From the NCBI RefSeq assembly GCF_964204865.1, contig NC_135251.1, forward strand, positions 10,292,001 through 10,356,000: a stretch of 64,000 bases of DNA. Direction: 5' to 3'. Made by a program: the position numbers and the translations under genes. Shown here piece after piece: positions 1,121 to 51,868 of the stretch (position 1 is the first letter of the stretch; each line of letters starts with the position of its first letter). The notes under the pieces were generated by a model. It was given only the letters and a program-made list of their open reading frames with translations. It was not told the origin of the DNA and made no database searches. This DNA comes from Styela clava (Eukaryota).

Positions 1121-1939
1121 ATGTGGAGCATTTCGATTTCTGTCGATTTTTAACCGGGCCTTGACTAATACCACAACTACAGTACCACAATCGCTTGATG
1201 AGTAATATCGAAATATACTATGATAGATGTTCAGTGTAGGAAGTGCTGACGAAAGCTCATATTATAGTAACAATATATCGATAGAAGCATCATTCATTCT
1301 TGCTTTTCGTCGTGGCGCTGTGTCATGTCCGTCGAGGCTGTTTCGTTATATATTGATTCATTATTGAGTAATATTATATCACAACCAGATCAGTAAGTTT
1401 ATCATGTTCTATTCAATATATAAAAACTTTCTAAAAGGTTATGGTGTGATTAGCTAGTATGCTGTCCTCATTCTACATTCAAAGGTCTTCGACCATCGTA
1501 AGGTATAGTAGTCAGTGTTTTTCTCCCTAAGGCTGAGGCAAAAGATATCGCATTTATGTTAAGGCATGTTATGCAAAGTTTGTCAAACGTGAGTGGAAAA
1601 AATTTGGACCATTTAAAATGTGAGGCGGAGAAACACAATATTAAGAAAAATGGAATAAGGCAGCGCTAGGACTAATACTAGGCAGTACTAATTTGTTCAA
1701 GTCCATACGATGAATACAACCAGAAAATTGGTCTGAATGATGAAGTTTGTTAACGGTTGCTAAAATTTTGTTGTCACGTCCTCGTTGATATTTTGCTCAT
1801 TAGTCAATATTAGGGAAGTAATCAAGGAAGTCGATGCTCGATGATTAATACATTCACATATTATAATAGCTATTAACGCAAGGGTAACGTACACACCAAA
1901 GAAAGTCTACTGATTTTGTGGAAGTTATCGGTGGTAAGC

Positions 1940-4900
1940 ATGTACATGATGATGGCAAAAATTACATTGGTATTGACTACATTATTTCTTCTAATCAGCC
2001 AAAAAGGTAAGAAAAAATTTTTTTTCTCGTAATATCAGTTGATAAAGATATTCGAAAAATATAACAAAAAAGTTTAAAATACTTCAGAACTTAATTTGCG
2101 TGATAGAATTCAAAAGAAAATTGTAAATATAACCAGGCTCATGTTTAATATTTAGTATCAACGGAATGGGACCTTACTAAGTTGTTCGTCCCTCGTTTCC
2201 ACCAAAAGGGTTATTGGTTGTTCAATTAGAATCTAATATTGAGATTAATCGCTAGTTCGCGGGTATAAGGTGCATTTTTACCATTCAGGATTGATTTGAA
2301 ATGTAAAAATGTTACTTATCAATCGTTGTCAATTGGCATCTCAGTCTTTATGATACCAATTTCTTGAGTGGTTAAAGATTGTATTTTTCGTCAGAAGGTC
2401 ATGAGTTATTTCAAATATTTGAACATCGCTCTCTTTTTAGTAAATTGCTAGTGCTTTGAGCAAACTTTTATATAATTTCAAATTATAGTTATGTGATTAA
2501 TATTATATATGATGGAGGGATTCATGGGGTCGAGCGAACCCGTTCTTGGAATAACGTGATATCAGCGAACCTGATGTAATTTTTCAGAGCTTGTAAGCCT
2601 GGAAAGGTTTTTTTTTTAAATGAAAAAATTTGTTGTTAGTGAGTTCGACACAAAATATAACCTATTTGTACGTCAATAACAGGCAGCTTTACAGGCGGAC
2701 AAAATATCTGCTCAGAAAATGGAACATCAGTTGTGATTAATGACACTCTAGGAACAATACATGTCCCGAGCATATATGTACCTGAGAACGATCAAACAAA
2801 TAAAGCTTGTTATTGGCGGTTTGAGCCGGTTAATAAAACCTATGGTGTTGAGCTATCAGTGGATATAGACGACGGTCAAGGGGAAGTTAAAATAGATCTC
2901 ATAGGTGAGAGCTTATTTTAGAATAAGAACACGTACAGACAGGACCAAATAATGTTTTAGTTTTACTATTCTGCTGTACTATGCACACTTCTACTATTCT
3001 ATGCAAGTTACATCGAGATTTTCTAAGTAGGTAAAAAATTTGAAGATTCAAAAGTGATTATTTTAAAATAATGAAAGTGTGCTACTAATTACCCAATCGT
3101 GAATTCGCAGTTACGAATTTTGTGAGAATAATTAGCTTATTGGACTTATACTGTTAATGTAATACGGTTCACTTAAATGCCTGTCTTCTACACTTCTCCC
3201 ACCATTTTGTCCATTGCGGATGAGTTTCCAATCTGTCTATGGCTGTTAGATAACCGATTAGATAACCAGATATCCGAGGCTTGCAGACAGATTGGATGTG
3301 ATTTTCCACATAATAAAGCCCTATTATCGACTGAAATATTTATTTACTATTGTTCCATCTATTCACTACTTTAAACAGATCAAGAAATTAGAGAAACTGC
3401 ATGTGCAGAAGATGGCTATTGCTCAGAGTACTACGAATACAAAGACAAACAATATCATGGTATCTGCTTTAGAGAATGGTCATGGCTTATTTGGCGGTAC
3501 TGGACGCGCGAATACTGTTTAGTAGATGGAACGTCGAAAAAGTCGAGATGTATCCCATGTGAGGGTAGTGGTAAGTTATTGATTATATCAGCGGTTCCCA
3601 ATCTTTTTAAAAATCATCCTAATTTGGCCTATTTTGGAACTCTTTGTTCCTCTGACACAGTGGTTCTCAACCTGTTACAGACCGCGTACCACTTTACTGT
3701 TTTTTTACTATGGCCGCGTACCACCGACAAAGCCCCTTTTTTGGAGTGAGAAAAAGACACCAGAAACGTGCTATGGGAGTATTTTATAATGTGGCACTAC
3801 ATCCCTTGTGGCGTAACATGCAAAACGGACAAAAACATGCCCATATCGCTTCATTTAAGGTGGGCAATAGCGGGCGAGGGCGATCTCTAAAGTCAAGGAC
3901 TGGTAGCGCACCAGCGCTATAGACGTTTCCCCGACCATTAACCCCGGAAAAATTATCCCTATACTTTACTATTGCAAACTTTATACTTATTCTGAGAGTG
4001 TTTTGATGTGTTGGCGCATATAAACCGGTTTACGTGTTTGAAACCATCATTTGTATTGAAATTAATCAACCATGTGCCGTTTGCAGGTACTGATATATAT
4101 AGCTAAGTTTAGCCTTGTTTATCGCAGCATTTGCGAGATTCATTTTTAATTACTGCAACTAAATTAAAGCTCCGCGGAAGACATAATGACAACTAAGTTA
4201 ATGAATTCACAATTCTTTTTTTGAAACACAACTGAAAACTGACAATATCACCCAAAACTACAAAACCGAGGCAATGTTTGCAACCATGCTTGAATATCTG
4301 TTTGGGCGACAAAAGTGTCTGAGCGGCTGGTTGCAAAAATTGCAATTGTTCCCTGTTGCGTCATTATTGACTTATTGCTGATTGGTTATAGTTACGAAAA
4401 TAAACAAAGAAACTGAAGCTTGGGAAAACATCCATAAACGCTCAGCGAATACATACAGCAGGGAAGATAAAACGTTGCCGGCATATTTTAGCCAACTGAA
4501 AGGCTAATTGCAACTTGCAATAGTTCAAATCTGCTCGCGTACCACTTGAAAAGCTCCCGCGTACCACATGTTGCTCTAACACTATAAAATTATGCTTCCG
4601 ATATTTGTTCAATCTTATATAGATCCTAAGCTAGTGTTTTTTAAGCTCCAATACCTTTTGTAGAATGTAACACACACATATTAGTAATACCAAAGAACAA
4701 AGGAATATTAGTGATACAAATGCAAATACAGGGCAAAATTTCTCCCCGAGCACATCGAAAATCACCACCGGCTCGAATTCTCCCTGGTGTAGGAAAGTTG
4801 GAGAATATCGTTGAATTTCACGAGTGAGAATGCAACATTCTATTTGTAAATTTTCAAAGACTAATTTCATTTTATGTTGCTTGCAGGTTCAACGAATCTC

Positions 4901-7058
4901 AAACACGGAAAAAAGTATTGCTATAACAATTGTGGAGCAGAGTTTGAATCAAGTGAAAATTGTGATGAGGAACTAAAACAAAGAAATGTTGATGCGTTTA
5001 TTATGTACAGCAACACCAATTTGGAAAATTCATTTAATATAACGTACAATATAATACCGTGTGCGAAAAGCGACTCAGTTATATCCACAGGTGATTTTTC
5101 AGCCTTCTTCCCAAACCTAAAACAGTCTGAATTTCTTTTTGGGAAATTTTTTCAAAATATTTTAAGATATCTAAGTTTTGTTGTTGAAAATATCCATTTT
5201 CTGGACCGGATGTTAACCTTTGACGAAACCCTGACAAAGGGAGTCACATAGTAGAAAAGGTTATTAATCCTTTGGAATAGCGTGACGAATTAGTTCTAGT
5301 GCGTTGAGTTGAATTACTATTTATCTATGAATGACACTGAATTCATGATAAAATGATAATTAGTAAGAAAGAGTAATTTGGTTGAAAATCAGTGAAGTTG
5401 TTGAATAATTTTTTCAACGATAACTCATAGTTATCACTTGATTAGCATGTATGGTAAGTATCAATAATGGGTATTTTTTTATTCCAGTAGTGTAATTAGC
5501 CTACATAGAGTTTTACTAGTTTTTTTCATCTTTGAGTGATAATTATAACAACATTTAATTATGTCTTAAAACATTTAAACAAATTCAGCGTTGATGTAGT
5601 TTGAGCTTCCGTCGCTTGTATAGTACACCTTGATTTAAATACAGTAACCCTGAGTAATAAGCAAAGGAAAGTATAAGTGCTGCGGTACGCGTTCGAAAAG
5701 CGAAATTATTTATCATATATCTACAAGCTATTCTTACACACATTGTAACTCATGTCGTTTCCTAATTTAAGCTACAACGGCCGCGAAAACTACCATTGAC
5801 ACAACGATAACACAAGAGACTGCGGTTCATGAAAATATAACCTCGTTGACTCAACAAACAATTTCAGAGCATTCAACAGAAACGAAGAGTTCACAGGAAG
5901 GTGAACAAATTTGAATACTACCTCCATTATTCTATCACTGCTGTCATGGCAAGTTATTTGGAATAATTCTCCCAATATTTTCGGTACATGAATGTCTACC
6001 AACAGCGCCAGTATTAAATTTCACGATAAAATTTCTTACATTTATAAAATTTTACTCAACTATTATTTATTCAGAAAATTAAAAATTCTTGTAAAATCTT
6101 TACAAAATCTTTGTTACCTAATTTTATGAGCTTCACTAGATTTTAGCATATTTTTTGTATATCAATATATTTTTATTCTTGATAGCGACTACGCCACCTA
6201 CCGGGACCGCAGCAGACATGGACGCCGGAAAGCAAACAGGGAATAAAACACTAACCATCGTCTTACCAATCATTGGGGCAATACTGATTATATTGCTCAT
6301 CATAGTGGCAGTTATTGTGATTAAACGGTGAGCATTTTTTTCTGTAATTAAAATATCGAATTTAAATTTTGGGATTGGTGATGGACCCACCCCCGCACCG
6401 ACTATTAATTGAGCGATAGAAAAGTTCTAATTGACATGTATTTCAGTATTATTTGCAACCCATGCAACCGTTCGACCACTGACATACCATACATAGTATG
6501 TGTACCAGGTTAGGGTTCAGGTTACTTCCCCAGTATGTTCTAAATATATTAGCGCGTTTTGATTTCCAATATTGCTAAAATTTAAACCGAAAATGATTTC
6601 ATTCGATGTTGGATTCAGTATTGAATTTTGTTTATATATACCTGATGTGCTTTAAGTTTCCTGTACTTTCCTGGCCTCGAAAATAAAATACCGTGTTTGA
6701 ATTGCGATGACGTTTTTGACCTAAGCATTACTCAGTGACGAGTATACAGGCACAAAACGGTGACTCATCCTTTTTCACGTAAATTCATGAGCTATGCCTG
6801 ATGTTATTTCAATAGTTTTTCCTCCTAGGAGGTAGAACATACTCTTTACTTTCATAATAACTTTTTAATTTATGTCACAGAAGGAGACATCTGAATGCAT
6901 TATCGAGTGCAAAGACGACGGTTAACAACGCGTATGAACAAACTAATTTCGATCAAGCAGAAACAAGTCCAGAAATGGTTGATAATATATTGTACGATTC
7001 ACTACAACAACAGAATGAAAAAATAGAAGTTGAAAATGAATTGTATGGAAGTGCGTGA
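1940..7058 (+). CDS. Type I membrane receptor (377 aa, 7 coding exons): signal peptide, CUB-like domain interrupted by a Cys-rich FN2-like module, Thr-rich stalk, TM helix, tail with ITIM/NxxY motifs
   Basis: Exons 1940-2006 (MYMMMAKITLVLTTLFLLISQK, signal peptide-like), 2683-2904 (C..GTIHVPS..CYWRF, CUB N-half), 3379-3570 (six Cys), 4887-5090 (GKKYC..FNITY, CUB C-half), 5772-5900 (Thr-rich), 6186-6327 (TM: LTIVLPIIGAILIILLIIVAVIVI), 6881-7058 (tail, TGA). All introns are GT-AG with phases 1,1,1,1,1,2, giving a continuous 1134-nt ORF. Domain names come from by-eye motif recognition. Confidence 0.85.
3658..4575. mobile_element. hAT-like non-autonomous element in intron 3 of the receptor gene
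   Basis: Begins cagtggttctcaacc; repeated cgcgtaccac motifs near both ends; right end degenerate. Confidence 0.45.
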
Positions 7059-7857
7059 TCACTCCAACTCGAGGACATAAAAATTTATATTGAAGATTTG
7101 ATGTTTTACGAGTGTCGGCATTAAGGGCAATATTTAGCAAACTGAATGAAAAGATGATCATGAATGAAACAAGAAAAACTGCCTGTCTGTCAAAATAATT
7201 TATTTATCCTGACCAAGGACATATTATGTATTCTGATTTGCTTGTTCACTTTGACCACTTGTCCCGCAATATATAACTACCTAGAACATGAGTGACAAGG
7301 CAAGTGGAGCAATGTGGAGTGTAATCATTTGGACCAGAGGTGTGCAACCTATAATACAGAAGAGTCAAATACAATAATAACATAGGCATTCTAGTAGTTG
7401 CAAGCACAAAAATATTGTTGAGTAATCTTATGACATGCTCTGTTCGTTTTTCACAAGCTAGATTTTTCGGGATTATAACGTCCGTCATAGGCATAGATAA
7501 TGAATAAGACTCAAAGTAATTGAAATTACTCGTAGTACCAGTTTAAAGTGAATAAAAACTAGTTTCGCGGGCCGCACACCATTCAAAATTGGCACTTCTA
7601 CGCGGGCCACACAGTTTTTCCTCACGGGCTGCAGGCTGCAGGTTGCACACCCCTGATTTAGACCTTCATGGCATTGTCTATTAGACAAATTTTAAACTGA
7701 ATAATAACCGTAATCATGAAAATCTATATATGCTAAAATTAATGAGCATTAATGGGTTACCATATTATCACATTCGCTAGCAGGAAATGGAGTTTGGAAT
7801 TTTTTTATCCAACCTCCAACCACAATTTTATTGCACTTGTTGGAACTACGAAACCAC

Positions 7858-17415: not shown

Positions 17416-20400
17416 ATGTATCTAAGTTCATTTGCGGGAGACAAAATATGCATCGAGGCAAACAAACTTTGGAAAAAACCTCAAGAAAAAAAGATAACGA
17501 ACATAAACCAACGAGAAGCGCAACACGTGCTTCCGAAGAGCGACGGCCGTGATATGACAAACGGGATAGACAAAGAAACTATATCGGATATATGTAAAGA
17601 ACGGTATTTTAGCCACAATCCAGATGCCATAATATCCAAAAATATTAACAAACATGATAGAACTTTACAAACAATAAAAGTCGAACTCGTTCCAATCGAA
17701 ATGTTCCATAAAATGTGTATTACAAAATCAAGTGAATCCTGTCCATCTGCCACAAGTAGTTTTGCAAATGAACGGAATTGTGAAAAGAGACAAAGTTGTA
17801 GCGAGAAAGGAAAATCAAACCCGAAGAGAATGGAATCGACAGGACAATGGGTTAAAAGCCAAACTGATTTTAATAATAATAATAACAAACATATTGATAA
17901 ATATATTTGGAGGCTGCCAAAGGAGAGAACCAGTGACGCCCAAGACAACCAACTTCCAAAAATAATAAAAGAACTATGTACCAAAAACTTTCCCTCTGAT
18001 TCTCAGGGCACTTACCTACACACACATAACAGAGTTGATGTGGTCCATAGGTCATTGCCAACACGTAACGAAATGCTATATAAACAGTCTCGCAAGTATT
18101 ACGCTGAAAGAACAAGATATATATCTTCTTTGCAACCTCGTGAAATAAATAGGTTTCGAGTCTTGGACAGACAACCCATTCACAATAAATATCCACTTAA
18201 CACTGTCTCTCAGTGCAGAGTAAACATTAATTCAAAACCAAAATTATTGAACGAATGTCGTAAGGATTATATTCAACAACCAATGAATCGAAGGATATAC
18301 GAAATTTCAAATGGACATCAACGACGAGCTATAAAAGCAAGATCAGCTTCTCCGGTAAGACTGAAGCGGTCAAATACATCAACAAAGTCTTTGTTCGATC
18401 CTTGGGTAACTCTTGGAATTTGTTTTTGTTTGGACAACGATTCTGATGATTCCGATAGCGAGGACGAAGAAACGGAAAATGCGCAAACGTCAAGAGCGAA
18501 GGGAACACAAAAGGCTCGAGACACTTCAAGCGATGACGACGGTAGGCAGAAAAACATGTAGCTAGCTTAGCATCGTGCTAAGCGTTAGGAATACGCTCGC
18601 CACCGCATCTCTAATTACCCTGCGTGGGGTTCGCAGTTTCGAATCCCATGCGGGGGCGGTTATGTGCGAGAGGATTGATGGACTCCTCGCCGCCGTAGGG
18701 TGGTTTACGTAACCGCTGGTCGGTTACGGCTTCCTCCACCATCAAGCCCATGCTTCCGAAAACAAATAACTGGCTGACTAATCCCATAACCGACCTGGAC
18801 TGGTGAACAGACGAGAGGCCGTGGTTCGCCATATTATCCCGGGATAAATATGTAAATCCTAATAGAGCTATAATAACAACCCTCGATTTTTTATAAGTTC
18901 CTGTTTGCCATTTCTCCGCTCTGACTTTGACATGCAGCCATGCCTATGACTTGCAACAGGAACAAGAATTGCTCCAGAATTTATGTTTTCCGTCTGTAAA
19001 ACGATAAATAATGATAGCTAATAATAACGCTAGTAATGATGGAATTAAATGAATATTTAGGTATATAATAGCAATGAAATAAGAATATTTTATCAACTAT
19101 TCTCTGTGAAACCAATATGCTATGTTTTCATATGAAGAACACGCGTTTCAATTCAATATAAACATGAGTGCATAAATTTTTCAATTATTACATAAGTCAG
19201 AGAATAGATAAATTTAATTTCTTCATTGTCGTAAGCAGTAGCCGTTTTATATTTATCTCACTATCTCTTGAAGCAAAATTCGAAAGTGTTGTCTCAAGAA
19301 CCTAATTATGAATAATTCCTTATAAATCTGACTTTCAGGTGGCAGCGACACAGACCTAGACGACGATATATCAGAGACAGACAGCAAACTGGGCGACAGT
19401 GTCGCTTCAACGCCAAGTGCTCAAAACGGCAGTGATGGCGGAGATGATTCTGATTCGGGTTCGGAAGAGTTTGACGGAGAAAGCTTTGCTAGGTTTGGGC
19501 TACTCACATCTAATTGCATTAGCACGCGTTAAAGCACAAAATTTTCTTACAGAACAGCTGAGCGAGACGGAGTTTTTACTGACAATCGACTTTTTTCCAA
19601 TGTTTAGTATATCATTTGCATTGGAGAAAACATTTAAAACTCATCTTTTGTTATGCCATGCGTAATTCTAAAAAGCAATTAATTAAAAACGCTGACTGAA
19701 AAATCACAAATTTGCTTTCAAGTTATAAATCGCGAAACCAAACCGCGAAACCGTTGAATCAAACCAAACCCGGAGATATCGGTATGGACGGTACGAAAAA
19801 TACTCTGTTTTAGACTTCGTGTCCATATCTGTGAGCTCTTGATTATACGACTCTCACGGCCTTTGTTTCGAACAAGTAGCATTGCAGGCAGTCTTTAATA
19901 TATATTTAGGGATTCAATAAAATCGTTGAGAAAACGGGAATTTTTCCAAAACATCCTGGGTGAATTAGCGGGAAAGAGATTTGATTACGAAATGTGAAAT
20001 CTGCAATGCCAACTCTTAAGATTCAATCGCTAAGACGCATAGCCTGGACATGCCCTCCATAAATTCTTACGCCTTCTCAGTACCATTTTTTGCTATTCTG
20101 CTATTCTTAAACGATTTACTGAAAACATTACTTTTCCTGGCTTGCTATGAATAATCTTTTCATCTAATGAGCGAATCGAGTTATATGAAACAGAGATTCT
20201 TTAAGAAATTGTTAGATATAAGTGGCCGCTATTATCTAACATTGTTCGGGGCAAATAAGACGATTAAGCGTCATATTAGGCTCTTGGCCTCATATTACGC
20301 TCTTGGCCCGTGTCATGATTTGTTCATTCTACGTTCTGCAGTTCAGCCTACGAGGAGGAGGTGATGGAAATAGAAGACACAATGCAAGGAATTGGAGGAT

Positions 20401-24812: not shown

Positions 24813-25937
24813 CTAACAGTTAAACAAACATTTAAAAATTAATTTCCAATCCTTTAACATAAAAAATATAGCAAAATTATTCACAAATGCGTTCAGTTCA
24901 AAGACCATTCCATAAACGTAGTTTTCTATTAAGAGATCTGGATCATCAGGATGATTTTTGAAAAATATGAAAAAGATGCAAATAAAAATATCTGATGCAA
25001 CGCAAATTGTAGACAAAATCGCAGCTTTCTTGAGTACTGAAATAATTGATCTCGGCGGTTTCAGACTTTGTTTGCGTTGCTGTTGTATAGTCCCGTGTTC
25101 ACTTGTCGGGCGCGCGATTATGTCCTCCGATGATGAAGAACTTCTGCGGATTTCCACTATGTTTTCCACTGTTCTTGTTTGAAATATTGTTGCAATATTT
25201 TCTTTGACTTGTGGGCATGATCTCTGCTTTAACATCTGTCGCCAAAGAGGGAATATAAACAGAAATAGAAGGATTCCTTGACTTGCTGACGATATGATAA
25301 TTTGTACTGCATATATCACTCCAAGTAATGAATTTTTGCTCGCGTCTTCAACGCACTTGCCATTTATAGACACTGTCTTTGTTAATGTATACACTGTACA
25401 TAAACTGTATACATTGCTGATTACAATTAAAGACAAACACACAAAGCTTAATTTGTGAAAACAATTTGGAACTAGCCTTTGCATGTTAGGTTTTGAGTAG
25501 AGCATGTATTGTCGAAACCACAAGGTGAAATAACAGATAAAAATATTGATGACGTATAATGACGCATTTGTAAAAATCATGGCGGAACATACGAAGTCAT
25601 TTGTCGTCACAAACATCGTAAGCAACATGGATTGCATTGTTCCACATCTCATCACAGTTAAAAACATTGTACAAAATATCAGAACGTAAAACACTAATGT
25701 TTTTCGTCGCTTTCCGCGGAAGAAATTTCTTTTATTTAAACCATACTTTATCATGGCAATGAAAGCTATGAATGTGAGAACAAACACACACACATAAATT
25801 GATTGACATATAATCCACTGTGCGGTTTTATAAGGATGAATTTTGTGTTCGCTTGAATTTGATGCATGCTGATAATGATCAGAACTGTTCATAAGCGTCG
25901 CAGTATTTCCATCTCTTTGAATGACAATTGAATTCAT
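24813..25937 (-). CDS. Orphan 7TM GPCR-like protein (374 aa), uninterrupted ORF
   Basis: Seven hydrophobic segments; N-terminal NxS/T sites; Cys at the top of TM3 (DFVC) and in ECL2 (NGKCV); YFTLWFRQYMLYS at the TM3 end; C-terminal NNFAIFFMLKDWK shared with three paralogs. Confidence 0.85.
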   Translation of the reverse strand: MNSIVIQRDGNTATLMNSSDHYQHASNSSEHKIHPYKTAQWIICQSIYVCVFVLTFIAFIAMIKYGLNKRNFFRGKRRKTLVFYVLIFCTMFLTVMRCGTMQSMLLTMFVTTNDFVCSAMIFTNASLYVINIFICYFTLWFRQYMLYSKPNMQRLVPNCFHKLSFVCLSLIVISNVYSLCTVYTLTKTVSINGKCVEDASKNSLLGVIYAVQIIISSASQGILLFLFIFPLWRQMLKQRSCPQVKENIATIFQTRTVENIVEIRRSSSSSEDIIARPTSEHGTIQQQRKQSLKPPRSIISVLKKAAILSTICVASDIFICIFFIFFKNHPDDPDLLIENYVYGMVFELNAFVNNFAIFFMLKDWKLIFKCLFNC

Positions 25938-32500: not shown

Positions 32501-35252
32501 AAAATGTCGTCGTTAGTTTCGAATTATTGAATTGAAAACGTGCCGTTTTGGTCAATCTTTATGGTATCATATGGCAACCCGATAGCTTAATTATGTAAAA
32601 ATTCTAGAGCACGTTACATGGAACATTTAAACTCCAACACACTTTCTGGCCTCAATCAACGTCAAAACGAGGATATCGGTCGGAGACCGAAGACTTATCG
32701 ATCGAAACTGCGGTTTCGATTCATGCCTCTATAGTGACACCGCGTGTCCCATCACTAATAAATTAATAACTCGCTAATTATACGACATAATTCATCCAAA
32801 ATCAATAGGCTTCTATTTCAAGATATGATGAATTCACATGCAAAATTTGGACAACCACGCGAGATATCGCGTGCATCTAACAGACAAACAGACAAACTGA
32901 CAAATATCTATTAATTATCGATCTAAAGATCGATAAGTAATAAAGGAAATTTAACTTATTTGTAAGTCCAGTATAACATGGCGTCGGAGATTTGAAATTT
33001 ATTCGTAATACCTCGCTTTCCAAGGACGTAGGTGGCAAAATTTAATGTTTTAATGTTAATCGAAATTGCATGAAACCACTATCTTTCAAGTTAAGAACAA
33101 AATAAACAATAGTCGAGATGAATTTCTCAATTTTCTTTTTCTGGAGCCATATTTTCTCAACGCAATTCAGACATAAAACTATTTTCTGCAGTGAGTTATT
33201 TATAAAACGTTTTTTTCATTGTTTGTGAACGCTCTGCAATCTGTCTGATTGATGTATTCTATGTTTCCAGTAATAAATTTATTGACAGGACCAATTACAA
33301 TAAAAACGTGGCATACAATTATATATCTTCCAAGTATTCGAAAATCGATTCGAAAAGAAATATTCGATTCGATTCTGAAACCATAAGGTATTCGAAAATG
33401 CCCAGCCCAAAGTAAGACACGTGGTAGTTTAAACGGACTTGTATAATTCGTACCTTCGAGGTGAAACATCTTAATGCATTTCCTTGCCGTTGGTGAAAAT
33501 AAAGCAAGAGGCATTGATAAGATTCCTGAGTTGCGTTCGTTCCAATGCTTATGCCAGCTCTTCAGCCATCCGTCTTCGTCTCTAGTCATAAATATAAGCT
33601 GAAAAGGAGGCGAATAGGGAACATGAAATAGGGTGTTTCAAAGCAGATTTTATATAGTACATCTATAACTAATATAATTCATTGTCTTTGTACGCCCCAA
33701 AGTAGGGGTTACCGAAATTGGGCACATGTACCCGCATAGGTACATTTCGACTTCGAAGCTTGCATTACGTAGAAGTATGAAAATTCCTTCTTTGAGCTCT
33801 AATATGCTTCACAATATTATTTATAACCTGATATATTTTCCTAAACTGTTTTTGAGGTTTCACTCTTCGGGTTATAAGCTTTTAAGCACCAAGAATAATC
33901 TTCAATGCAGACTTCTAACTGAATTTCTATACGATACAATTGCGCAGATCATGGTGGTATTATATGTATATGTGACATTGATACTGAGACTTTTTGGGCC
34001 TCTCCGTGAACGCAAATAAAAACAATGCTCCGTGCTTTCGCCGTACACGCGTGGTAGTAACGTGATCAGCGCACTTCAGTTGAACTTCAATTTGCCGAAG
34101 CCATTGATAAAATTTCATGTAGGATGCGTGGGAAGTCTCTCCTTTCTGACGCGCCCTCTATGGTAAACCAATCCGTGAAGCGAATTTTCGCAAGGAAACG
34201 AGTGGAGACGCTCGGTCGGCCCGCAAGGCTATGCAATATTAAATCAGATTTTTACTCGAGCAACGGTCGCAGTAAATTAACATATGGCGTTTACAATTAT
34301 ATTGATTTTTTATCCCATAAACAGCTACGTATTGCTGTTACCAAAATACACGATGAGCTTGAGTTTAAATTGGTGGTTTAAATGGTTTTTAGTAACACAG
34401 ATTTGAAGCATAAAGTATACTGTTAAAAAAAGACTAAACTAAAATTCAATTACGACTGGATTCCCGCTTAATATAGTATTATGACGCTAAAGATATGCTA
34501 TCAACAGATATTACCTTATATTGGGTGAATTAATTATACAAGTATTACAGAAGTAGTGCTGAAGTGGGCCTCGCGGTTTTTAAGGTAATTTTCTTACCGT
34601 TGTATAAAGTATTCACAATATAGAAAAAAACACACGGGACGAAACCTCGGGAAAGATTTCAAAACTTTAACTGAAGTTTTAAAATAAGACATAACAGTAC
34701 TGCACGGGCAACCTCATCTTTTGACATGGAATATAAGTTAGTTTGGGCCGATGGATCCATGCGCATATCACGGTCTTGACGAGACCAAACGTTACGGAAC
34801 TGAATGTGTATTAGTATACAGCCAGTCTTATGAATGACATAGATAGAAGTGCTGAATGCGAACAAGTATTATCCCGTACATTACAGGTCTTCAAATCCAA
34901 ACTAAAATGTCACGCAAATTGCGTGTAGCTATCATGACAAACCCAAACAAACAGCAAAATCAACCAAACCATGAGGCTGTTTTAATTTTAAGTGTCTCAC
35001 CTTTATCCCTGGGAATGCTTTAAGAAAATCTTCCCAGTACATATAAGCAGGTAGATCACTTGCCACATCCACACCAGCATACATATATCTTAGGTCATCG
35101 AGGCAACCTTTTCCAGTTGTATAATTCTTCCATACTTCGTAATGTTTCACATTAACAGACCAATAATCTGCAACCTTGTATCCTAGAAACTCCAGAGCTT
35201 TTTCAACTGATTTTGTCCCGGTTTTACAGAATCCAACAATCAAAATTTTCAT
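29552..35252 (-). CDS. Sulfotransferase-family protein (Sulfotransfer_4-like, 250 aa) with C-terminal TM anchor, 4 exons
   Basis: Exons 35252-35001 (MKILIVGFCKTGTKSV..DVASDLPAYMYWEDFLKAFP), 33598-33454 (LIFMTRDEDGWLKSW), 31652-31543 (YREHNKNIL), 29797-29552 (PRDRLLVL..EGWKPLCSFL..PDIEFPHCN, then a hydrophobic tail). GT-AG introns with phases 0,1,0; 753 nt. An in-frame upstream ATG at 35324 is an alternative start. Confidence 0.88.
30158..30775. mobile_element. hAT-like element in sulfotransferase intron 3
   Basis: Begins caggggtggccaa; ~30421-30775 is the reverse complement of ~36015-36383. Confidence 0.6.
32666..32940 (+). mobile_element. Helentron-associated (HINE/DINE-1-like) element
   Basis: 5' subterminal acttatcgatc (32693-32703) pairs with 3' gatcgataagt, which is also part of the hairpin ttatcgatc-taaa-gatcgataa; internal (cagacaaa)n microsatellite. 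Confidence 0.65.
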
Positions 35253-35422
35253 TCTTATTAAAACTGAATCAAGATGGGTCTTTCTCGGTATATTCCAACA
35301 CTCTGAATAATGTCTAACTAGCATTCGTATTCCAGTGTTCGTTCGGGCGTGAAAATAAACCCTTAGGGCTATTTATCGCCGGTCGATTTCCATTCAACCC
35401 GACTATTAGCACCCTGAATAGT

Positions 35423-46809: not shown

Positions 46810-48306
46810 CTACGACATACAAGAAGAAATGAAAATTTTTAAAATAGATTTCCAGTCCCTCAACATAAAGAAGATTGCAGAATTATTGACAATGGCGTTT
46901 ATCTCATTAACACTAGCAAAAACGTAATTACCAAAAATAATATTATTTGTTTCAGAATAATTCATCAAAATAGCAAACGCACCAGAACTTATAATATCAG
47001 TAATTATCGTAAAAGCTGCTAAAGCTGTGGATTTTTTCAAAACTTTAATGATTGGGTTTTGGTTTTTCTTGATAATTGTCTCGGTTTTGGATACGATATT
47101 AGAATCAGCTTCTTTTTCTGGATTTGGAGCTGTTGTTGTAACTTCGTTTGGCGCAGGAGGATTGTCAACCACAATCTCTTCTTTGCCAGAAATTAAATTG
47201 GGCTCAGCGTTAGTTACTTGTCGCAATTGAGGTTCATTGATGATTCCAACTGATTTACTCTGTCTCTCATGAGCTTCTTTGAATAGGAATTCATCGCCTG
47301 GCTTTGTTTCTTCGTTGACAGGACATTCATTAATAATTGAAACATCTGCAACTGTTAATCGTTTAGCAGATGGTGACGCACCGTGTAAGTTGGTGTTGAG
47401 ATTCCTTGGAGACGAATTAGCAACGTTGCTTGGACTTGCAATTTTTATATTTGTTGACTTATTTACAGAGTTATGTCCTTCAGATGAAAAAGATGTTTCA
47501 GCGATACCTTGCTTAGATGAGGAAGGTAAAAGTTTTTGTGTTTGTGAGTTTTCGTTGCTCAGCAATTTAGCTTTCTCTTGTCGCCTTCTTTGTTGAATAT
47601 GTTTAAACAAAGGAAACACAAATAAGAATAACAGCAATCCTTGACTTAAAATTGATATAATAACACCGAATGAAAATAGTCTGTTTAAGTCTTCATCGCT
47701 GTTTTTATCAAATACCTGAACGCACTCAAATCCGTTGAAAATCGTTTCTATGGAAGTTTCGAAAACACACGTGTAATAAACATTCTGTATAATAATTAAA
47801 CTAAGAGAAACATAACTCAAGCGACGCAACCATTTAGAGGTAAGTCTCTTCATATTTGGACGAGAGTATAGAACATATTGCCTGAGCCATAATGTTAGAT
47901 AGCTGGTAAACATATTCATTGAGTATAGCACTCCATTTATATTTGTTATGACGTAGCACAAGACGTCATCTGACTTAATAAACATACTAATAAGGTACGT
48001 CTGTAGTGTTCCAAGTCTTACTATTGTTTGAACAAATGCAGAGAACACCATAATGTATAAAATTGTGCGTTTATCCTGGCAATTGCATCTGAATTTTCGA
48101 TGACGTATCCCATATGACGTCATTGAAGAAAATACCAGCATAGTGATGAGAAAAACAAAAATGCACCAAACTTGACAAATTATCCATTCGGTATTTCCAA
48201 GTACTGTCTTTTTCCTTACGTGGTTCAATTCCACTGCTGTAGTAATAGTTACTGTATATTCCGATGTATTTTCAAAATTGCCGGAACCAGTTTCATAAAT
48301 ATCCAT
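46810..48306 (-). CDS. Orphan 7TM GPCR-like protein (498 aa) with long third intracellular loop
   Basis: Uninterrupted ORF; motifs WIICQ, YLTLWLRQYVLYSRPNMKRL, NGFECVQV, QGLLLFLFVFPL, NNSAIFFMLRDWK. Confidence 0.88.
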   Translation of the reverse strand: MDIYETGSGNFENTSEYTVTITTAVELNHVRKKTVLGNTEWIICQVWCIFVFLITMLVFSSMTSYGIRHRKFRCNCQDKRTILYIMVFSAFVQTIVRLGTLQTYLISMFIKSDDVLCYVITNINGVLYSMNMFTSYLTLWLRQYVLYSRPNMKRLTSKWLRRLSYVSLSLIIIQNVYYTCVFETSIETIFNGFECVQVFDKNSDEDLNRLFSFGVIISILSQGLLLFLFVFPLFKHIQQRRRQEKAKLLSNENSQTQKLLPSSSKQGIAETSFSSEGHNSVNKSTNIKIASPSNVANSSPRNLNTNLHGASPSAKRLTVADVSIINECPVNEETKPGDEFLFKEAHERQSKSVGIINEPQLRQVTNAEPNLISGKEEIVVDNPPAPNEVTTTAPNPEKEADSNIVSKTETIIKKNQNPIIKVLKKSTALAAFTIITDIISSGAFAILMNYSETNNIIFGNYVFASVNEINAIVNNSAIFFMLRDWKSILKIFISSCMS

Positions 48307-48960
48307 ACGTTTTAAAAAAAGCCATCAAACATATTTATAAAATAATTCTGAAAAAAAAACAATAATTAGTTATGAACTTTGTCTAAAAATACTGATGAAT
48401 ACAAACTGCTAACCGTAAATAATGTAAAAAAAAAGTGCAAATGAATTAGTTAAATCGTGCCTCGTTGCTCAGATTTTTATGTATTTTTTTTTCACTTGCT
48501 TTAATAATAGCTTAGCTATATTAATCATGGGTATACAATACACAGTGGCGAATCAGTCAGCGAATCCGTTCTTTATTAGGACGTTAGAATTGTAGCAAAT
48601 GGGTTAAGTAAACCACAGCTGACGTTTTATTTGGTGTTTCGAAATGTATGTATTAGGTTTCTGAAAAGCATATCATGTTAATGCAGCTTACGTAGTGGGA
48701 TACATATATTTTCTGAAATAAGGTAATCTACTGTTTCTGGATTCGATACTAAAGAGAAGTGGTTTTTTTAAATTTTGAATTTCATTCTAGTTATAAATTA
48801 TTTTCAAATAATTCAAAAACATAATGAATAAAAATAAAAACATATGTTTTCGAATTCATTCGTAATGGTATTTTGCTGTAAATTCGTTACTATTAATATA
48901 AATTACAAACTATTTTCAAATATCAAACGAAGTTTTTTTTTTAAATAAGAACAAAAAATA

Positions 48961-49268
48961 AACAAGAGAGCTATGCTCAAATATATGGACACGCAGCGGT
49001 CATATGCGTTCGCTGAACCTCCACATGGTGGCAAATTTTGATGACGCCATAGCACACAAAAAACGATTCCCATACAGCTCACCGGAATATTTGAAACAAA
49101 TAAAAGTAATAACCTTCTGGCAGAAACTTCAATCTTTAAGCGCTTGAAATTCCAAAGCAATTGGTCCAGTAATCAATGAGAGAAGCGATTTTTTCTGTGA
49201 CAAAGAACAACAAAAACAACAACAACATAATAACAAAACGATCCATATGCCCACTACGTGTCCAATTA
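48961..49268 (+). mobile_element. Second HINE/DINE-like family, apparently full length
   Basis: Subterminal IR tggacacg (48986) / cgtgtcca (49257); (aac)n tract near the 3' end; related fragments at ~24550-24650, ~27340-27545 and ~45250-45390. Confidence 0.55.
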
Positions 49269-49418
49269 CTACTTAACAAATATTCTAAGACTAAGTTAAG
49301 ATATACACGTTGTATTGTAGAATATGATATTTTCGAAGTTGTGTTTTGAAAAACATATTTTACTATGAATAAAACGTCAAAAAATCCTATCAAAAATTAA
49401 ACTGATTATGATTAGATT

Positions 49419-50909
49419 TCATCTACAAAAACAGTTTGACAACACAGTTTTCCAGTCTTTGAGTATAAAAAATATTGCGAAATTATTTACAAATGCATTA
49501 ATTTCGTTTATACAAGAATAAACATACGATCCAATATATTCTCTGTCAAACATCGCTACAAATACCGCAAAAACAGCTAACGTGCAGATATCACTTATAA
49601 CAGTTATTGTTGCCAGCACAGTAGATTTTTTCAAAACGTATATTATGGGGCTCGGTTTTACTGAATCCTGGTGTTTTATGGGATTGTTCCCGATAGATTT
49701 TGTTCGAGCCTTTTCTTCTACAGGAGCAATGGAACTTTCATAATTTTGAGGGTTGCTGACAATCTGAGGGTCATTTTCAGTTCGTTCGATTTCATGATCA
49801 TCTAGTTTCGTAACGGCTTCTGTGTGCTCCCACTTAGGTTTGACATTTTCATGTTCCTTGTCAATTTTCTGGTGGACTATCTCCAAAGACTGGCAAGGAT
49901 GTTTGATTGAATTTGCTGTTTTCTCATCGACTGAATATTCTCCTACAATGGAAACGTCTGCGACTGTAAGTCTCTTTGCTGATGGAGAGCAATTGATTTG
50001 TTTTTCACTTTTTAATTCTGCTTGTAAAGCTGATACAGTTGGCTTGTCTTCAACTATTTCATCTTTTGGTGCTGCAGTATTACAGACTTCCTGAGCTGAA
50101 AATGAAGATTCCGCTACACCAGATTCGTTCTTTGCTTGTGATGAAGGAAGGAGTTTAACAGTGTGAGAATCGTCAGCTGGTGGTAGTTTAACCCTACTTT
50201 GTCGTCTCCGATTTTGGACGTGTTTAAGAAGAGGAAATATAAATAAAAATAACAATAAAGCTTGACTTGCAATCCCTATGAAAACCGATATAGAAAACAT
50301 TGTATTTAAAGTTTTGTCCTCGCCATCTTCTAAAACCTGAACACATTCAACTCCATTAGAAACCATCTTTACAGTAGTAGCATAGACGTACATGTAATAT
50401 ATATTTTGAATTAAAATTAGCAATATGCAAACGTAACTTAAAAACCGAAGCCATTTAGGAGTTAATCGTTTCATGTTTGGACGAGAGTATAACAGATACT
50501 GTCGAAGCCATAATGTGACATAGACCATCATAATGTTGATTGAATAAAAAATTCCGTGAACAACGGTAGCGGCGTTACAAATACCATCATCAAGAGTCAT
50601 AAATACAGTGGACAGCATTACCTCAAAAGCACCAAGTCTAAGAAGGGTTTCAATGCCAGCTGAAAAAACCATCACATACAAAATCGAACTTTTATCTCTG
50701 CTGTTGCATTTTAGCTTCCTGTTACGTAATCCATATGACGTCATAGCACAAAACACTCCCATTGTGATGATGAAAATGATAATGCACACTGCTTGACAAA
50801 TAATCCATTGCATATTCATGTTTATTATCTTGGCGTTTTCTTCAATTAAACCGTGGTAGCTGGTCGAATTCGGGAGACTTTCTCTTTGTCCCGTTGATGG
50901 AATATCCAT
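49419..50909 (-). CDS. Orphan 7TM GPCR-like protein (496 aa), tandem paralog
   Basis: Uninterrupted ORF; motifs WIICQ, YVTLWLRQYLLYSRPNMKRL, NGVECVQV, NNFAIFFILKDWK. Confidence 0.88.
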   Translation of the reverse strand: MDIPSTGQRESLPNSTSYHGLIEENAKIINMNMQWIICQAVCIIIFIITMGVFCAMTSYGLRNRKLKCNSRDKSSILYVMVFSAGIETLLRLGAFEVMLSTVFMTLDDGICNAATVVHGIFYSINIMMVYVTLWLRQYLLYSRPNMKRLTPKWLRFLSYVCILLILIQNIYYMYVYATTVKMVSNGVECVQVLEDGEDKTLNTMFSISVFIGIASQALLLFLFIFPLLKHVQNRRRQSRVKLPPADDSHTVKLLPSSQAKNESGVAESSFSAQEVCNTAAPKDEIVEDKPTVSALQAELKSEKQINCSPSAKRLTVADVSIVGEYSVDEKTANSIKHPCQSLEIVHQKIDKEHENVKPKWEHTEAVTKLDDHEIERTENDPQIVSNPQNYESSIAPVEEKARTKSIGNNPIKHQDSVKPSPIIYVLKKSTVLATITVISDICTLAVFAVFVAMFDREYIGSYVYSCINEINAFVNNFAIFFILKDWKTVLSNCFCR

Positions 50910-51240
50910 GTTGATAAAGAAATTATATTATTCATTGACAATAAATTTCACTAAATACCTAATTTCTAAAAACCGGAAACAAAAATCATAGTCAATTTCG
51001 ATTTGAAATATTTGTACGTAACTGATATAGTGTCATAATTTATCAAAATTTCCTGACCTTGTATTGGAGGTATGCATTATATTTAACAAAAAAGAATGCT
51101 TAATTAATCAACAGTTAAATGATTTTAATGAGGATTCTCTGACTTATCACACATTATTTTGTGTATTGTGTAGCATAAAAACAACACTTCATAGAAAAGG
51201 GGTTATGTTTTTTACAAATAGAAAATGATTATTCAAAAAA

Positions 51241-51353
51241 GGGCGCTCCCGAAGTATGTGCACCAAGATGGCGCACAACCTGAATTTCTAACCTGGTACA
51301 ACTACTATGTTCAGGTTCTGCGCCATCTTGGTGCACATACTTCTGGAGGTTCC
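51241..51353. mobile_element. ~113-bp palindromic MITE between two GPCR genes
   Basis: gaagtatgtgcaccaagatggcgca ... tgcgccatcttggtgcacatacttc (25-bp perfect inverted repeat); A6 flanks. Confidence 0.75.
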
Positions 51354-51868
51354 AAAAAAGTTTACTGTAGGTACTGCTAGTCATCCGAATATTTTTGATT
51401 TGATTTTTCCCTGATTTATCATATATTATGTGGTGTAGTATTAAAATATTTCATGCTCTTCGATTGAAATAGTTCATTATAATCATTCTATATAGCAATT
51501 GACTATTCAAAAATTTTAACTGTAAAAGTTGCTCAACATTCATTTAATTTTGATTTGATCGATTAAATATATATTGAACAGCGCAGGATAAAGCATAAAA
51601 CCATAAAACATTCGGCGTTTTAATTGCCGGAGTGCACCATGCCCATTACAAAAAAAAACTATATTAATTCAAAAGGCTGCTGCAAGAATTGCATAACAAT
51701 TAATAATTTTTATTAATCCTTTTTTGATTTAATATATAGGATAGATATACTTCTAAATTTAAAGTAGCGGAGTACAACACGTTCAGTACAACAAATAACT
51801 TCAAAAAGTTAAGTAAGAATAATATAACAGTTAAGTGAAAGATTAACAATAAATTTAAACATTCTAAT

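What the first reader, a model, noticed from the sequence alone, without database searches (positions are those of the whole stretch)
1940..7058. Hidden ITIM-bearing cell-surface receptor, a candidate invertebrate-chordate immune or recognition receptor
Seen: the ORF track shows only fragments, but seven exons splice into a 377-aa type I protein. Its ~59-aa tail has three tyrosines, each in NxxY context (NNAY, NILY, NELY), and ILYDSL (6987-7004) fits the ITIM consensus [ILVS]xYxx[LV]. Known: ITIMs recruit SHP-1/2 or SHIP, NxxY motifs bind PTB/FERM adaptors, and ITIM-bearing Fester co-receptors are described in the ascidian Botryllus. Inference: an inhibitory recognition receptor built on a non-Ig ectodomain. 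Homology to any described family is not established here.
Basis: partly seen in the sequence, partly recalled or inferred. Interest (0 to 1): 0.75.

Follow-up and report, generated by a model that had tools for sequence, protein, structure and literature searches.

The report
Polymorphic orphan sea-squirt surface receptor
This is a real, expressed Styela clava gene for a small single-pass surface glycoprotein with a fast-changing outer part and a conserved tyrosine-bearing tail, but its supposed inhibitory (ITIM) signal is a weak motif match that the only other known version of the protein lacks.

Summary
The seven exons, all six GT-AG junctions and the 377-aa product are confirmed by spliced contigs from three studies. 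The product is identical to RefSeq XP_077966387.1, "uncharacterized protein LOC120336240 [Styela clava]", so the gene is annotated, not hidden.

It encodes a type I membrane glycoprotein: signal peptide, 12-Cys ectodomain, Ser/Thr-rich stalk, transmembrane helix and a 59-aa tail with three NxxY tyrosines.

The ITIM reading is weak:
- The consensus appears in 9% of shuffled tails.
- The only other known form (459 aa, same LOC) reads ILYDSQ.
- The tandem upstream copy is a pseudogene that stops before the motif.
- The protein has no Ig or Sushi domain, so it is not a Botryllus FcoR relative.

What stands out instead:
- No homologue outside S. clava was found among billions of proteins.
- The ectodomain is far more variable (64% identity between the two forms) than the stalk, transmembrane helix and tail (85%; tail 95%).
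- A Kringle domain is present in one form and only a relic in this one.
- Exon 2 has a weak CUB-like signature, closest to the CUB-like tyrosine-tail receptor arrays that this scan already found elsewhere in this genome.

Function is untested.

The parts
1816..1939 (+). 5' UTR, minimum extent
   Evidence: The spliced contigs start at 1816 (X5), 1875 (X6) and 1891 (X1).
1940..2006 (+). Exon 1 coding part: start codon and signal peptide (MYMMMAKITLVLTTLFLLISQK)
   Evidence: Junction 2006/2683 is seen in X1, X5 and X6. Kyte-Doolittle mean is 1.95 at residues 1-19.
2683..2904 (+). Exon 2 (phase 1-1): N-terminal CUB-like half (C32...C65-Y-W), three N-glycosylation sequons; the most variable exon
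   Evidence: hhalign gives 80.8% probability, E 1.3e-5 against the S. clava CUB-like receptor exons and 20.8%, E 1.1e-3 against canonical CUBs. There is no Pfam hit. The X5 allele differs at 16 of 187 nt, with 10 nonsynonymous and 3 synonymous codons among the listed changes.
3379..3570 (+). Exon 3 (phase 1-1): six-Cys, Trp/Tyr-rich module of unknown fold
   Evidence: P0001 itself was the only hit among 1.84 billion representatives. Pfam gives nothing at E<=10. The fn2 and WSC models do not hit it.
4887..5090 (+). Exon 4 (phase 1-1): four-Cys segment ending ...SFNITYNIIPC
   Evidence: There is no signal against CUB. The C-terminal 36 aa are 58% identical to the upstream copy.
5188..5235 (+). 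Kringle relic inside intron 4, with an in-frame stop; it corresponds to P0002 residues 270-285
   Evidence: tblastn of P0002 gives 75% identity over 16 aa, with a stop. The RNA contigs join 5090 directly to 5772.
5772..5900 (+). Exon 5: Ser/Thr-rich stalk
   Evidence: Junctions are seen. The stalk is 37% Ser+Thr.
6186..6327 (+). Exon 6: end of the stalk plus the transmembrane helix (LTIVLPIIGAILIILLIIVAVIVI), followed by KRRRH
   Evidence: The Kyte-Doolittle maximum is 3.48 at residue 299.
6881..7058 (+). Exon 7: cytoplasmic tail and stop codon
   Evidence: It is 95% identical to the P0002 tail. The alignment of exon 7 plus flanks with the upstream pseudogene copy has 91% mean column identity.
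6924..6935 (+). NNAY (Y337)
   Evidence: It is kept in P0002 and in the upstream copy.
6987..7004 (+). ILYDSL (Y357): ITIM-consensus and YxxL match
   Evidence: P0002 reads ILYDSQ. Chance expectation is 9%.
7035..7046 (+). NELY (Y374), three residues before the C-terminus
   Evidence: It is kept in P0002.
7059..7288 (+). 3' UTR, minimum extent; polymorphic
   Evidence: X1 contig 4 covers 7029-7288 with 9 differences, and X5 contig 7 covers 7079-7255.

Best explanation
LOC120336240 of Styela clava is a transcribed, taxonomically restricted gene for a type I surface glycoprotein.

Shown:
- The outer part is a 12-Cys ectodomain.
- Its first exon is a very divergent CUB-like half, most like the CUB-like tyrosine-tail receptor arrays of the same genome.
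- A Cys-rich stretch of unknown fold follows (exons 3 and 4).
- Then come a mucin-like stalk, one transmembrane helix and a 59-aa tail with three conserved NxxY tyrosines.
- The locus evolves by birth and death. There is one intact copy without its Kringle, one tandem pseudogene, and a 459-aa form with a Kringle in the older annotation.
- The ectodomain varies far more between forms than the stalk, helix and tail.

Inferred mechanism: a variable ectodomain binds an extracellular ligand, and the conserved tail couples binding to the cell through tyrosine-dependent adaptors (phosphotyrosine/PTB-type) or tyrosine-based sorting. The ILYDSL ITIM match is one possible read-out, but it is dispensable, since one natural form lacks it.
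For: - Gene model and expression; spliced contigs from 3 studies; identity with the RefSeq protein.
- Topology.
- Orphan status: exon 3 found only the protein itself among 1.84 billion representatives. The full length, the ectodomain and the tail each found only P0001 and P0002 among 5.8 billion clusters. The PDB profile search found nothing relevant.
- CUB-like exon 2: hhalign 80.8%, E 1.3e-5 to the C6 family. That family matches canonical CUB at 97.5%, E 6e-12. The Atlas feature search of P0002 lists CUB proteins first at 0.86, which is a lead only.
- Variable outside, conserved inside: 149/232 identities (64%) against 128/151 (85%); tail 95%. The X5 contig differs at 16/187 and 11/203 nt in exons 2 and 4, against 4/129, 0/143 and 1/179 in exons 5-7. 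Exon 2 shows 10 nonsynonymous and 3 synonymous codons.
- All 12 non-Kringle Cys align between the two forms.
- Birth and death.
- The NxxY pattern is non-random, arising in 0.1% of shuffles.
Against: - The fold of exons 3-4 is unknown, and the C-terminal CUB half gave no signal.
- Pfam CUB is not reached.
- A nonsynonymous-to-synonymous ratio near 1, loss of the Kringle and a neighbouring pseudogene also fit relaxed constraint.
- P0002 may be a paralogue of another haplotype rather than an allele. Its DNA could not be fetched.
- Logan contigs can mix alleles.
- Tissue, ligand and phosphorylation are all untested.
- The runs called RNA are only guessed to be RNA, although their spliced contigs are absent from the DNA run.
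Confidence: 0.6

Rival explanations
1. One reading: an inhibitory receptor whose phosphorylated ILYDSL ITIM recruits SHP-1/2 or SHIP.
For: - ILYDSL fits [ILVS]xYxx[LV].
- No indel was listed in exon 7 for the three RNA-like runs, which differ there by 1, 1 and 4 letters.
- Botryllus, of the same family Styelidae, has ITIM-bearing FcoRs and expresses SHP-1 and SHIP homologues (passages of PMC12582321).
- In that paper some FcoR alleles also differ in having or lacking a canonical ITIM.
Against: - The consensus arises in 9% of shuffled tails.
- P0002 reads ILYDSQ.
- No intact paralogue carries the motif. The upstream copy stops at ...QAGTSP before it.
- There is no activating partner and no charged residue in the transmembrane helix.
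- The protein has no Ig or Sushi domain.
Confidence: 0.15
2. An endocytic or sorting receptor. YDSL would act as a YxxPhi AP-2 signal and the NxxY motifs as PTB-adaptor signals, so the protein internalises a ligand bound by its CUB-like, Cys-rich and Kringle ectodomain, much as Kremen does with its partners.
For: - YDSL and three NxxY motifs sit in a short tail.
- The P0002 form joins a Kringle (PF00051, E 2e-25) to the CUB-like part, the domain types that Kremen also uses (abstract of PMC5014086, seen in the listing).
- The roles of YxxPhi and NPxY/NxxY motifs are recalled textbook knowledge.
Against: - P0002 lacks the hydrophobic +3 residue (YDSQ).
- None of the NxxY motifs has the canonical Pro.
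- The WSC model does not hit the gene; 0 of 71 matches lie in it.
- The domain order differs from Kremen.
Confidence: 0.15
3. A decaying, functionally dispensable orphan gene. It is transcribed but under relaxed constraint, and the motifs are leftovers.
For: - The Kringle exon has been lost, leaving a relic with a stop.
- The tandem copy is a pseudogene.
- Exon 2 shows 10 nonsynonymous against 3 synonymous codons.
- A six-residue indel and many replacements separate the two forms.
- No orthologue was found.
Against: - The 377-codon frame is intact across seven exons, in this assembly and in contigs of three studies.
- All 12 Cys are conserved between forms only 64% identical.
- The tail is 95% conserved. 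The alignment of exon 7 plus flanks with the pseudogene has 91% mean column identity, against 79% for the wider span 6535-7267.
Confidence: 0.1

Closest known systems
Styela clava CUB-like tyrosine-tail receptor arrays
   Same: Both are type I proteins in which the exon after the signal peptide starts ...FTG...C..N(G/T)(T/S)S.VIN..G.I..P......C.W.F.P. hhalign gives 80.8% probability, E 1.3e-5. Both have a stalk, a transmembrane helix and a tyrosine-bearing tail, are confined to this species so far, and show tandem duplication with pseudogenes.
   Different: - Single-sequence similarity is not significant (E 0.3-0.6).
- Our gene sits alone on C2.
- It has a Cys-rich stretch (exons 3-4) after the CUB-like half and, in P0002, a Kringle.
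- Its tail is short (NxxY three times). The one C6 member examined has a long tail of repeated DGYxxVQ-type motifs.
Botryllus schlosseri fester co-receptors (FcoR)
   Same: Both are type I proteins of a styelid ascidian with tyrosine motifs (ITIM, YxxL-type cores). Polymorphism is concentrated in the ectodomain, and some alleles differ in having a canonical ITIM (passages of PMC12582321).
   Different: - FcoRs are Ig-superfamily proteins with Ig-like and Sushi domains and are paired with Fester-family genes. Our protein has no Ig or Sushi hit.
- No non-Styela relative was found.
- FcoR sequences were not at hand, so no direct alignment was made.
Kremen1/2 (Kringle-WSC-CUB single-pass receptors)
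   Same: The P0002 form combines a Kringle with a CUB-like element and a Cys-rich module in a single-pass protein with a short tail. The Kremen domain set comes from the abstract of PMC5014086 (listing).
   Different: - The order is reversed: CUB-like first, Kringle last.
- The WSC model does not match.
- The window's own form has lost the Kringle.
- There is no sequence homology outside the Kringle.
CDCP1 and DCBLD1/2 (vertebrate CUB-containing type I scaffold receptors with tyrosine-phosphorylated tails)
   Same: CUB-type ectodomain plus single transmembrane helix plus a tail with several tyrosines. These clusters are among the nearest by language-model features for P0002 (scores 0.79; a lead only). 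Their phosphotyrosine-scaffold function is recalled, not from a call.
   Different: There is no detectable sequence homology. The domain number and the tail motifs differ.

Membership tests
ITIM-bearing inhibitory receptor (functional class) | A cytoplasmic [ILVS]xYxx[ILV] motif | tested here: met
   ILYDSL is at residues 355-360. The consensus also arises in 9.0% of 200,000 tail shuffles.
ITIM-bearing inhibitory receptor (functional class) | The motif is conserved in alleles, paralogues and orthologues | tested here: not met
   P0002 reads ILYDSQ. The upstream copy stops before the motif. No orthologue is known.
ITIM-bearing inhibitory receptor (functional class) | Tyrosine phosphorylation and recruitment of SHP-1/2 or SHIP | not testable with these tools
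   This needs biochemistry.
Botryllus FcoR family | [quoted passage not shown] | tested here: not met
   Pfam scans of P0001 and P0002 show no Ig or Sushi domain. The definition comes from passages of PMC12582321.
Botryllus FcoR family | Encoded next to a cognate Fester-family gene | not tested
   No Fester sequence was at hand. The six larger ORFs elsewhere in the window that were scanned gave no Ig or Sushi hit.
CUB domain (PF00431) | Match to the family model over its cut-off | tested here: not met
   No CUB hit at E<=10 for the exon peptides or P0001, nor at E<=1 for P0002.
CUB domain (PF00431) | Profile-level similarity of the N-terminal half (G.I.SP.YP......C.W.I) | tested here: inconclusive
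   hhalign against 11 S. clava CUBs gives 20.8%, E 1.1e-3. Against the CUB-like receptor exons it gives 80.8%, E 1.3e-5, and those exons match CUB at 97.5%.
CUB domain (PF00431) | C-terminal half of the beta-sandwich | tested here: not met
   The exon 4 alignment against the CUB alignment gives probability 0.3%.
S. clava CUB-like tyrosine-tail receptor arrays | Homologous CUB-like exon | tested here: inconclusive
   hhalign gives 80.8% over 43 columns. The single-sequence search gives E 0.3-0.6.
S. clava CUB-like tyrosine-tail receptor arrays | Related tail, or location in the arrays | tested here: not met
   No similarity to the tail exon L077:3731-4225; only one member was examined. Our gene lies on C2, away from the C6 and C5 clusters.
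Kremen | Kringle + WSC + CUB ectodomain | tested here: not met
   A Kringle is present only in P0002, with a relic in the window. 0 of 71 WSC matches lie in the gene. The domain order differs.
   No hit at E<=10 for the exon 3 peptide. 0 of 35 fn2 matches in the genome lie in the gene. The fold was not testable.

The most novel reading that the evidence does not exclude
The locus is a polymorphic self/non-self or partner-recognition receptor of a solitary styelid. In this reading, haplotypes differ by about a third of their ectodomain residues, by presence or absence of a whole Kringle domain, and by having (ILYDSL) or lacking (ILYDSQ) an ITIM. Individuals would then carry inhibitory and non-inhibitory alleles of one receptor, a parallel on a CUB-like scaffold to the allele-switching FcoR3/4 of Botryllus.
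Probability: 0.08. Interest if true: 0.8.

Novelty: new variant of a known kind. Interest (0 to 1): 0.35.

Why it matters
Ascidians are the closest invertebrate relatives of vertebrates. Botryllus shows that they build NK-like recognition systems from germline receptors with tyrosine motifs. Styela clava appears to hold many lineage-specific CUB-like receptors with tyrosine tails, and this gene is an outlier of that theme: hypervariable outside, conserved inside, with domain loss between haplotypes. If the variation proves allelic and selected, the gene would be a compact model for how recognition receptors diversify on a non-Ig scaffold. If not, it is simply one more uncharacterised orphan membrane protein, already annotated in RefSeq.

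Tried and rejected
- **Pfam:** the exon-by-exon scan and the scan of P0001 gave only sub-threshold hits, most over the stalk and transmembrane helix.
- **PDB:** the profile search with the ectodomain alignment gave one irrelevant match, TIM12, at E 0.035.
- **FN2 and WSC for exon 3:** rejected at sequence level.
- **Second half of a split CUB in exon 4:** no signal.
- **Intact paralogues with other tails:** searches of the genome with exons 2, 3, 4 and 7, with P0002 and with the A3 profile found only the tandem upstream copy. Apart from that, there were only non-significant or Kringle-only matches.
- **Upstream copy as an activating or truncated partner:** rejected. It lacks exons 2-3, has a stop in its exon 5-like segment and a 1-nt deletion in exon 7.
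- **Retrocopy as the source of the spliced contigs:** rejected.
- **Rfam:** no match in the whole window.
- **Literature:** 0 papers hold LOC120336240. Two papers hold both 'Styela clava' and 'ITIM', both general reviews judged from the listing only. None of the 10 listed papers (of 30 that held at least two of the terms) contained 'Styela clava'.
- **Supplements:** the SI of PMC12582321 (FcoR sequences and motif figures) was not opened. It could bear on the FcoR comparison.


Full report
**What is there.** The window is AT-rich eukaryotic DNA (GC 0.32-0.37). Between 1940 and 7058 on the + strand, seven exons with canonical GT..AG borders add up to 1134 nt: 1940-2006, 2683-2904, 3379-3570, 4887-5090, 5772-5900, 6186-6327 and 6881-7058. 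That is 377 codons plus a stop, and exons 2-6 are all in phase 1.

**Search rule followed.** Each exon peptide was searched separately. The full-length protein was obtained only as a database record.

**Transcription.** One stretch of 5501 bases was laid against four runs.
- X1 (study P1) carries all 6 junctions in spliced contigs.
- X5 (P2) carries 5 of 6 as exact joints, in one 1504-nt contig spanning exons 1 to 7. Its exon 2/3 junction appears as a joint with 38 replaced letters, from a divergent allele.
- X6 (P3) carries 5 of 6 and has no coverage around 5900/6186.
- The DNA run X9 carries 0 of 6 and has contiguous contigs running through the introns.
- The three spliced runs are only guessed to be RNA. 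However, the assembly holds no second copy of exons 2 or 3, so the spliced contigs are not explained by a retrocopy.
- No contig skips exon 3 or includes extra sequence between exons 4 and 5.

**Identity.** The exon 3 peptide, searched against 1.84 billion representative proteins, found exactly one protein at E<=0.001. This is P0001, 377 aa, 100% identical over residues 98-160. P0001 is RefSeq XP_077966387.1, "uncharacterized protein LOC120336240 [Styela clava]", on a 31.3-Mb contig. Its sequence equals the exon translations. The gene is therefore annotated and uncharacterised, not hidden. The organism is the solitary ascidian Styela clava; that it belongs to the Styelidae, the family of Botryllus, is recalled. 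No paper in the library holds the LOC number.

**Anatomy.**
- Signal peptide (exon 1).
- An ectodomain with 12 cysteines and four N-glycosylation sequons (exons 2-4).
- A stalk with 37% Ser+Thr and two further sequons (exon 5 and the start of exon 6).
- A strongly hydrophobic helix (Kyte-Doolittle 3.48) followed by KRRRH.
- A 59-aa tail with Y337 (VNNAY), Y357 (DNILYDSL) and Y374 (ENELYGSA). The last two sit in similar contexts, V[DE]NxLY[DG]S.
The ITIM match is unremarkable; the NxxY regularity is not.

**Relatives.** Three searches were run against 5.8 billion clusters: the whole protein, the ectodomain (P0002 residues 20-225) and the tail (P0001 residues 316-377). Each returned only P0001 and one other protein, P0002. 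These searches need shared 5-residue words and a length window, so distant kin can be missed.

P0002 (459 aa, UniParc UPI0019396CA6) carries the same LOC number, which suggests an older model of the same locus (inference). Compared with P0001:
- 64% identical over residues 1-229 (149/232).
- An extra Kringle domain (PF00051, E 2.1e-25, residues 234-309) between the exon 4 and exon 5 equivalents.
- 85% identical over stalk, helix and tail (128/151); the tail alone is 95% identical.
- All 12 non-Kringle cysteines align.
- In the tail P0002 reads ILYDSQ. One Leu is missing, which breaks the ITIM and YxxL consensus. NNAY and NELY are kept.

**The locus.**
- Intron 4 of the window gene still holds a 16-residue Kringle relic with an in-frame stop (5188-5235). 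This haplotype has therefore lost the Kringle.
- A tandem copy lies upstream of the window, spanning G000:C2:10281875-10290321; its 3' end is 1.7 kb from the window start.
- That copy has an exon 1-like start (82% identity), the last 36 residues of exon 4 (58%), two intact-looking Kringle exons, and exon 6-like and exon 7-like segments.
- DNA-level alignment shows that exons 2 and 3 are missing and that an exon 5-like piece is duplicated behind exon 1.
- Its second exon 5-like segment has a TAA in frame.
- Exon 7 has a 1-nt deletion that makes the frame end at ...QAGTSP, before the ILYDSL codons.
- Its helix has no charged residue.
- I read it as a pseudogene, not as an activating partner. No protein for it appeared.
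- The A3 profile found nothing else in the genome: 4 matches, all at this locus.

**Variability.**
- In the X5 contig, exon 2 differs from the window at 16 of 187 nt and exon 4 at 11 of 203. Part of exon 3 was too different to be laid.
- Exons 5, 6 and 7 differ at only 4/129, 0/143 and 1/179 nt.
- Fourteen exon 2 differences were listed, falling in 13 codons: 10 nonsynonymous and 3 synonymous. says 24 more rows were not shown.
- Several variants seen in the runs are the P0002 state: S20G (X5, X9), L45Q and V72G (X5), and Q257E (X1, X5, X6). An in-frame AAG after 2866 (X1, X6, X9) lies where P0002 has an extra Lys.
- X1 and X6 otherwise match the window allele in exon 2.
- This is what a mosaic of divergent alleles looks like.

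**Fold of the ectodomain.**
- Pfam finds nothing real in the exon peptides, in P0001, or (apart from the Kringle) in P0002. The PDB profile search found nothing either.
- The weak genome matches of exon 2 (E 0.3-0.6) lie in exons that match the start of Pfam CUB below threshold (E 0.0025-0.01).
- Those exons belong to a family of at least 31 exons, mostly at C6:20.22-20.41 Mb.
- The profile comparisons were:

| Comparison | Probability | E-value |
|---|---|---|
| P0001/P0002 ectodomain (A3) vs 15 family exons (A6) | 80.8% | 1.3e-5, over 43 columns |
| Family exons (A6) vs 11 canonical S. clava CUBs (A4) | 97.5% | 6.4e-12 |
| P0001/P0002 ectodomain (A3) vs canonical CUBs (A4) | 20.8% | 1.1e-3 |
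| Exon 4 (A5) vs canonical CUBs (A4) | 0.3% | 0.23 |

- Many CUB exons of this genome end near model positions 50-68. A CUB half-exon is thus common here.
- The language-model feature search of P0002, with Kringle clusters left out, lists CUB proteins first (0.86, a lead only).
- The fn2 and WSC models do not hit the gene: 0 of 35 and 0 of 71 matches.
- Exon 2 is therefore probably a very divergent CUB-like half.

**Relation to earlier notes of this scan.**
My tests support the N-terminal half only weakly. They do not support FN2 or the C-terminal half at sequence level.
- Several followed-up notes describe arrays of about 22 to 45 CUB-like tyrosine-tail receptor genes in S. clava (s1-815900, s1-819782, s1-825756, s1-809842). 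The scan has thus met this general kind before, on other DNA of this genome.
- My own searches confirm such a family on C6 and link our exon 2 to it at moderate confidence.
- The tail of the one C6 member I examined is a long run of DGYxxVQ-type repeats with no likeness to ours.
- Our gene is alone on C2 and has extra modules. It is at most a distant outlier of that family.

Passages of PMC12582321 confirm the following for Botryllus FcoRs:
- They are type I proteins with ITIMs, hemITAMs and other tyrosine cores.
- Polymorphism in FcoR7 is concentrated in the ectodomain.
- FcoR3/4 alleles differ in having a canonical ITIM.
- They are Ig-superfamily proteins with Ig-like and Sushi domains, paired with Fester-family genes.

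Our protein has no such domains, so membership is excluded and only a functional analogy remains. The analogy rests on one motif that is expected by chance in 9% of such tails and that one natural form lacks.

**Verdict.** An inhibitory ITIM function is unproven and rather unlikely as the conserved core of the tail.

The best reading is a lineage-restricted, fast-evolving recognition-type glycoprotein whose conserved NxxY tyrosine tail couples it to adaptors or sorting machinery. The rivals are true ITIM signalling, endocytic sorting, and a decaying orphan gene.

The roles of CDCP1, DCBLD and the YxxPhi and NPxY motifs named as analogies are recalled, not from a call. The supplements of PMC12582321 were not consulted.

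Noticed in passing
G000:C2:10281875-10290321 (L015:7875 to L016:8321), upstream of the window; its 3' end is 1.7 kb from the window start: A tandem, rearranged copy of the gene. It has exon 1, a duplicated exon 5 piece, the end of exon 4, two intact-looking Kringle exons and exons 5-7. It lacks exons 2-3, has a stop in its exon 5-like segment and a 1-nt deletion in exon 7. Probably a pseudogene; its transcription was not checked.
   Followed up: partly
window 6491-6523 (intron 6): A roughly 32-base core has enormous depth: the 6400-6583 bin reaches about 16,000 in the DNA run against about 20 beside it, and 980-2400 in the RNA-like runs. In other copies it is flanked by sequences that look like inverted repeats of each other (loose ends). 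There is no Rfam match. It may be a very abundant small mobile element or a satellite core.
   Followed up: no
window 3640-4560 (intron 3): A high-copy repeat, with depth 1300-1950 in the DNA run against about 20 beside it. It is also present in the RNA-like runs.
   Followed up: no
window 46810-53368, minus strand: Three tandem intronless ORFs of 496-499 aa. The one scanned has no Pfam hit at E<=0.01.
   Followed up: no
window 34935-35324, minus strand: An exon-sized ORF with a sulfotransferase domain (PF17784, E 4.1e-16).
   Followed up: no
window 17416-18561 (+) and 24813-25937 (-): Two long intronless ORFs of 381 and 374 aa with no Pfam hit at E<=0.01.
   Followed up: no
G000:C6:3581469-3583007 and G000:C9:6676529-6680273: CUB exons lie next to Kringle exons at other loci of this genome. 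The CUB plus Kringle combination is therefore not unique to LOC120336240.
   Followed up: no
L077:3731-4225 (G000:C6:20296231-20296725): The tail exon of a C6 CUB-like receptor gene encodes about ten tyrosines in repeated DGYxxVQ-type motifs.
   Followed up: no
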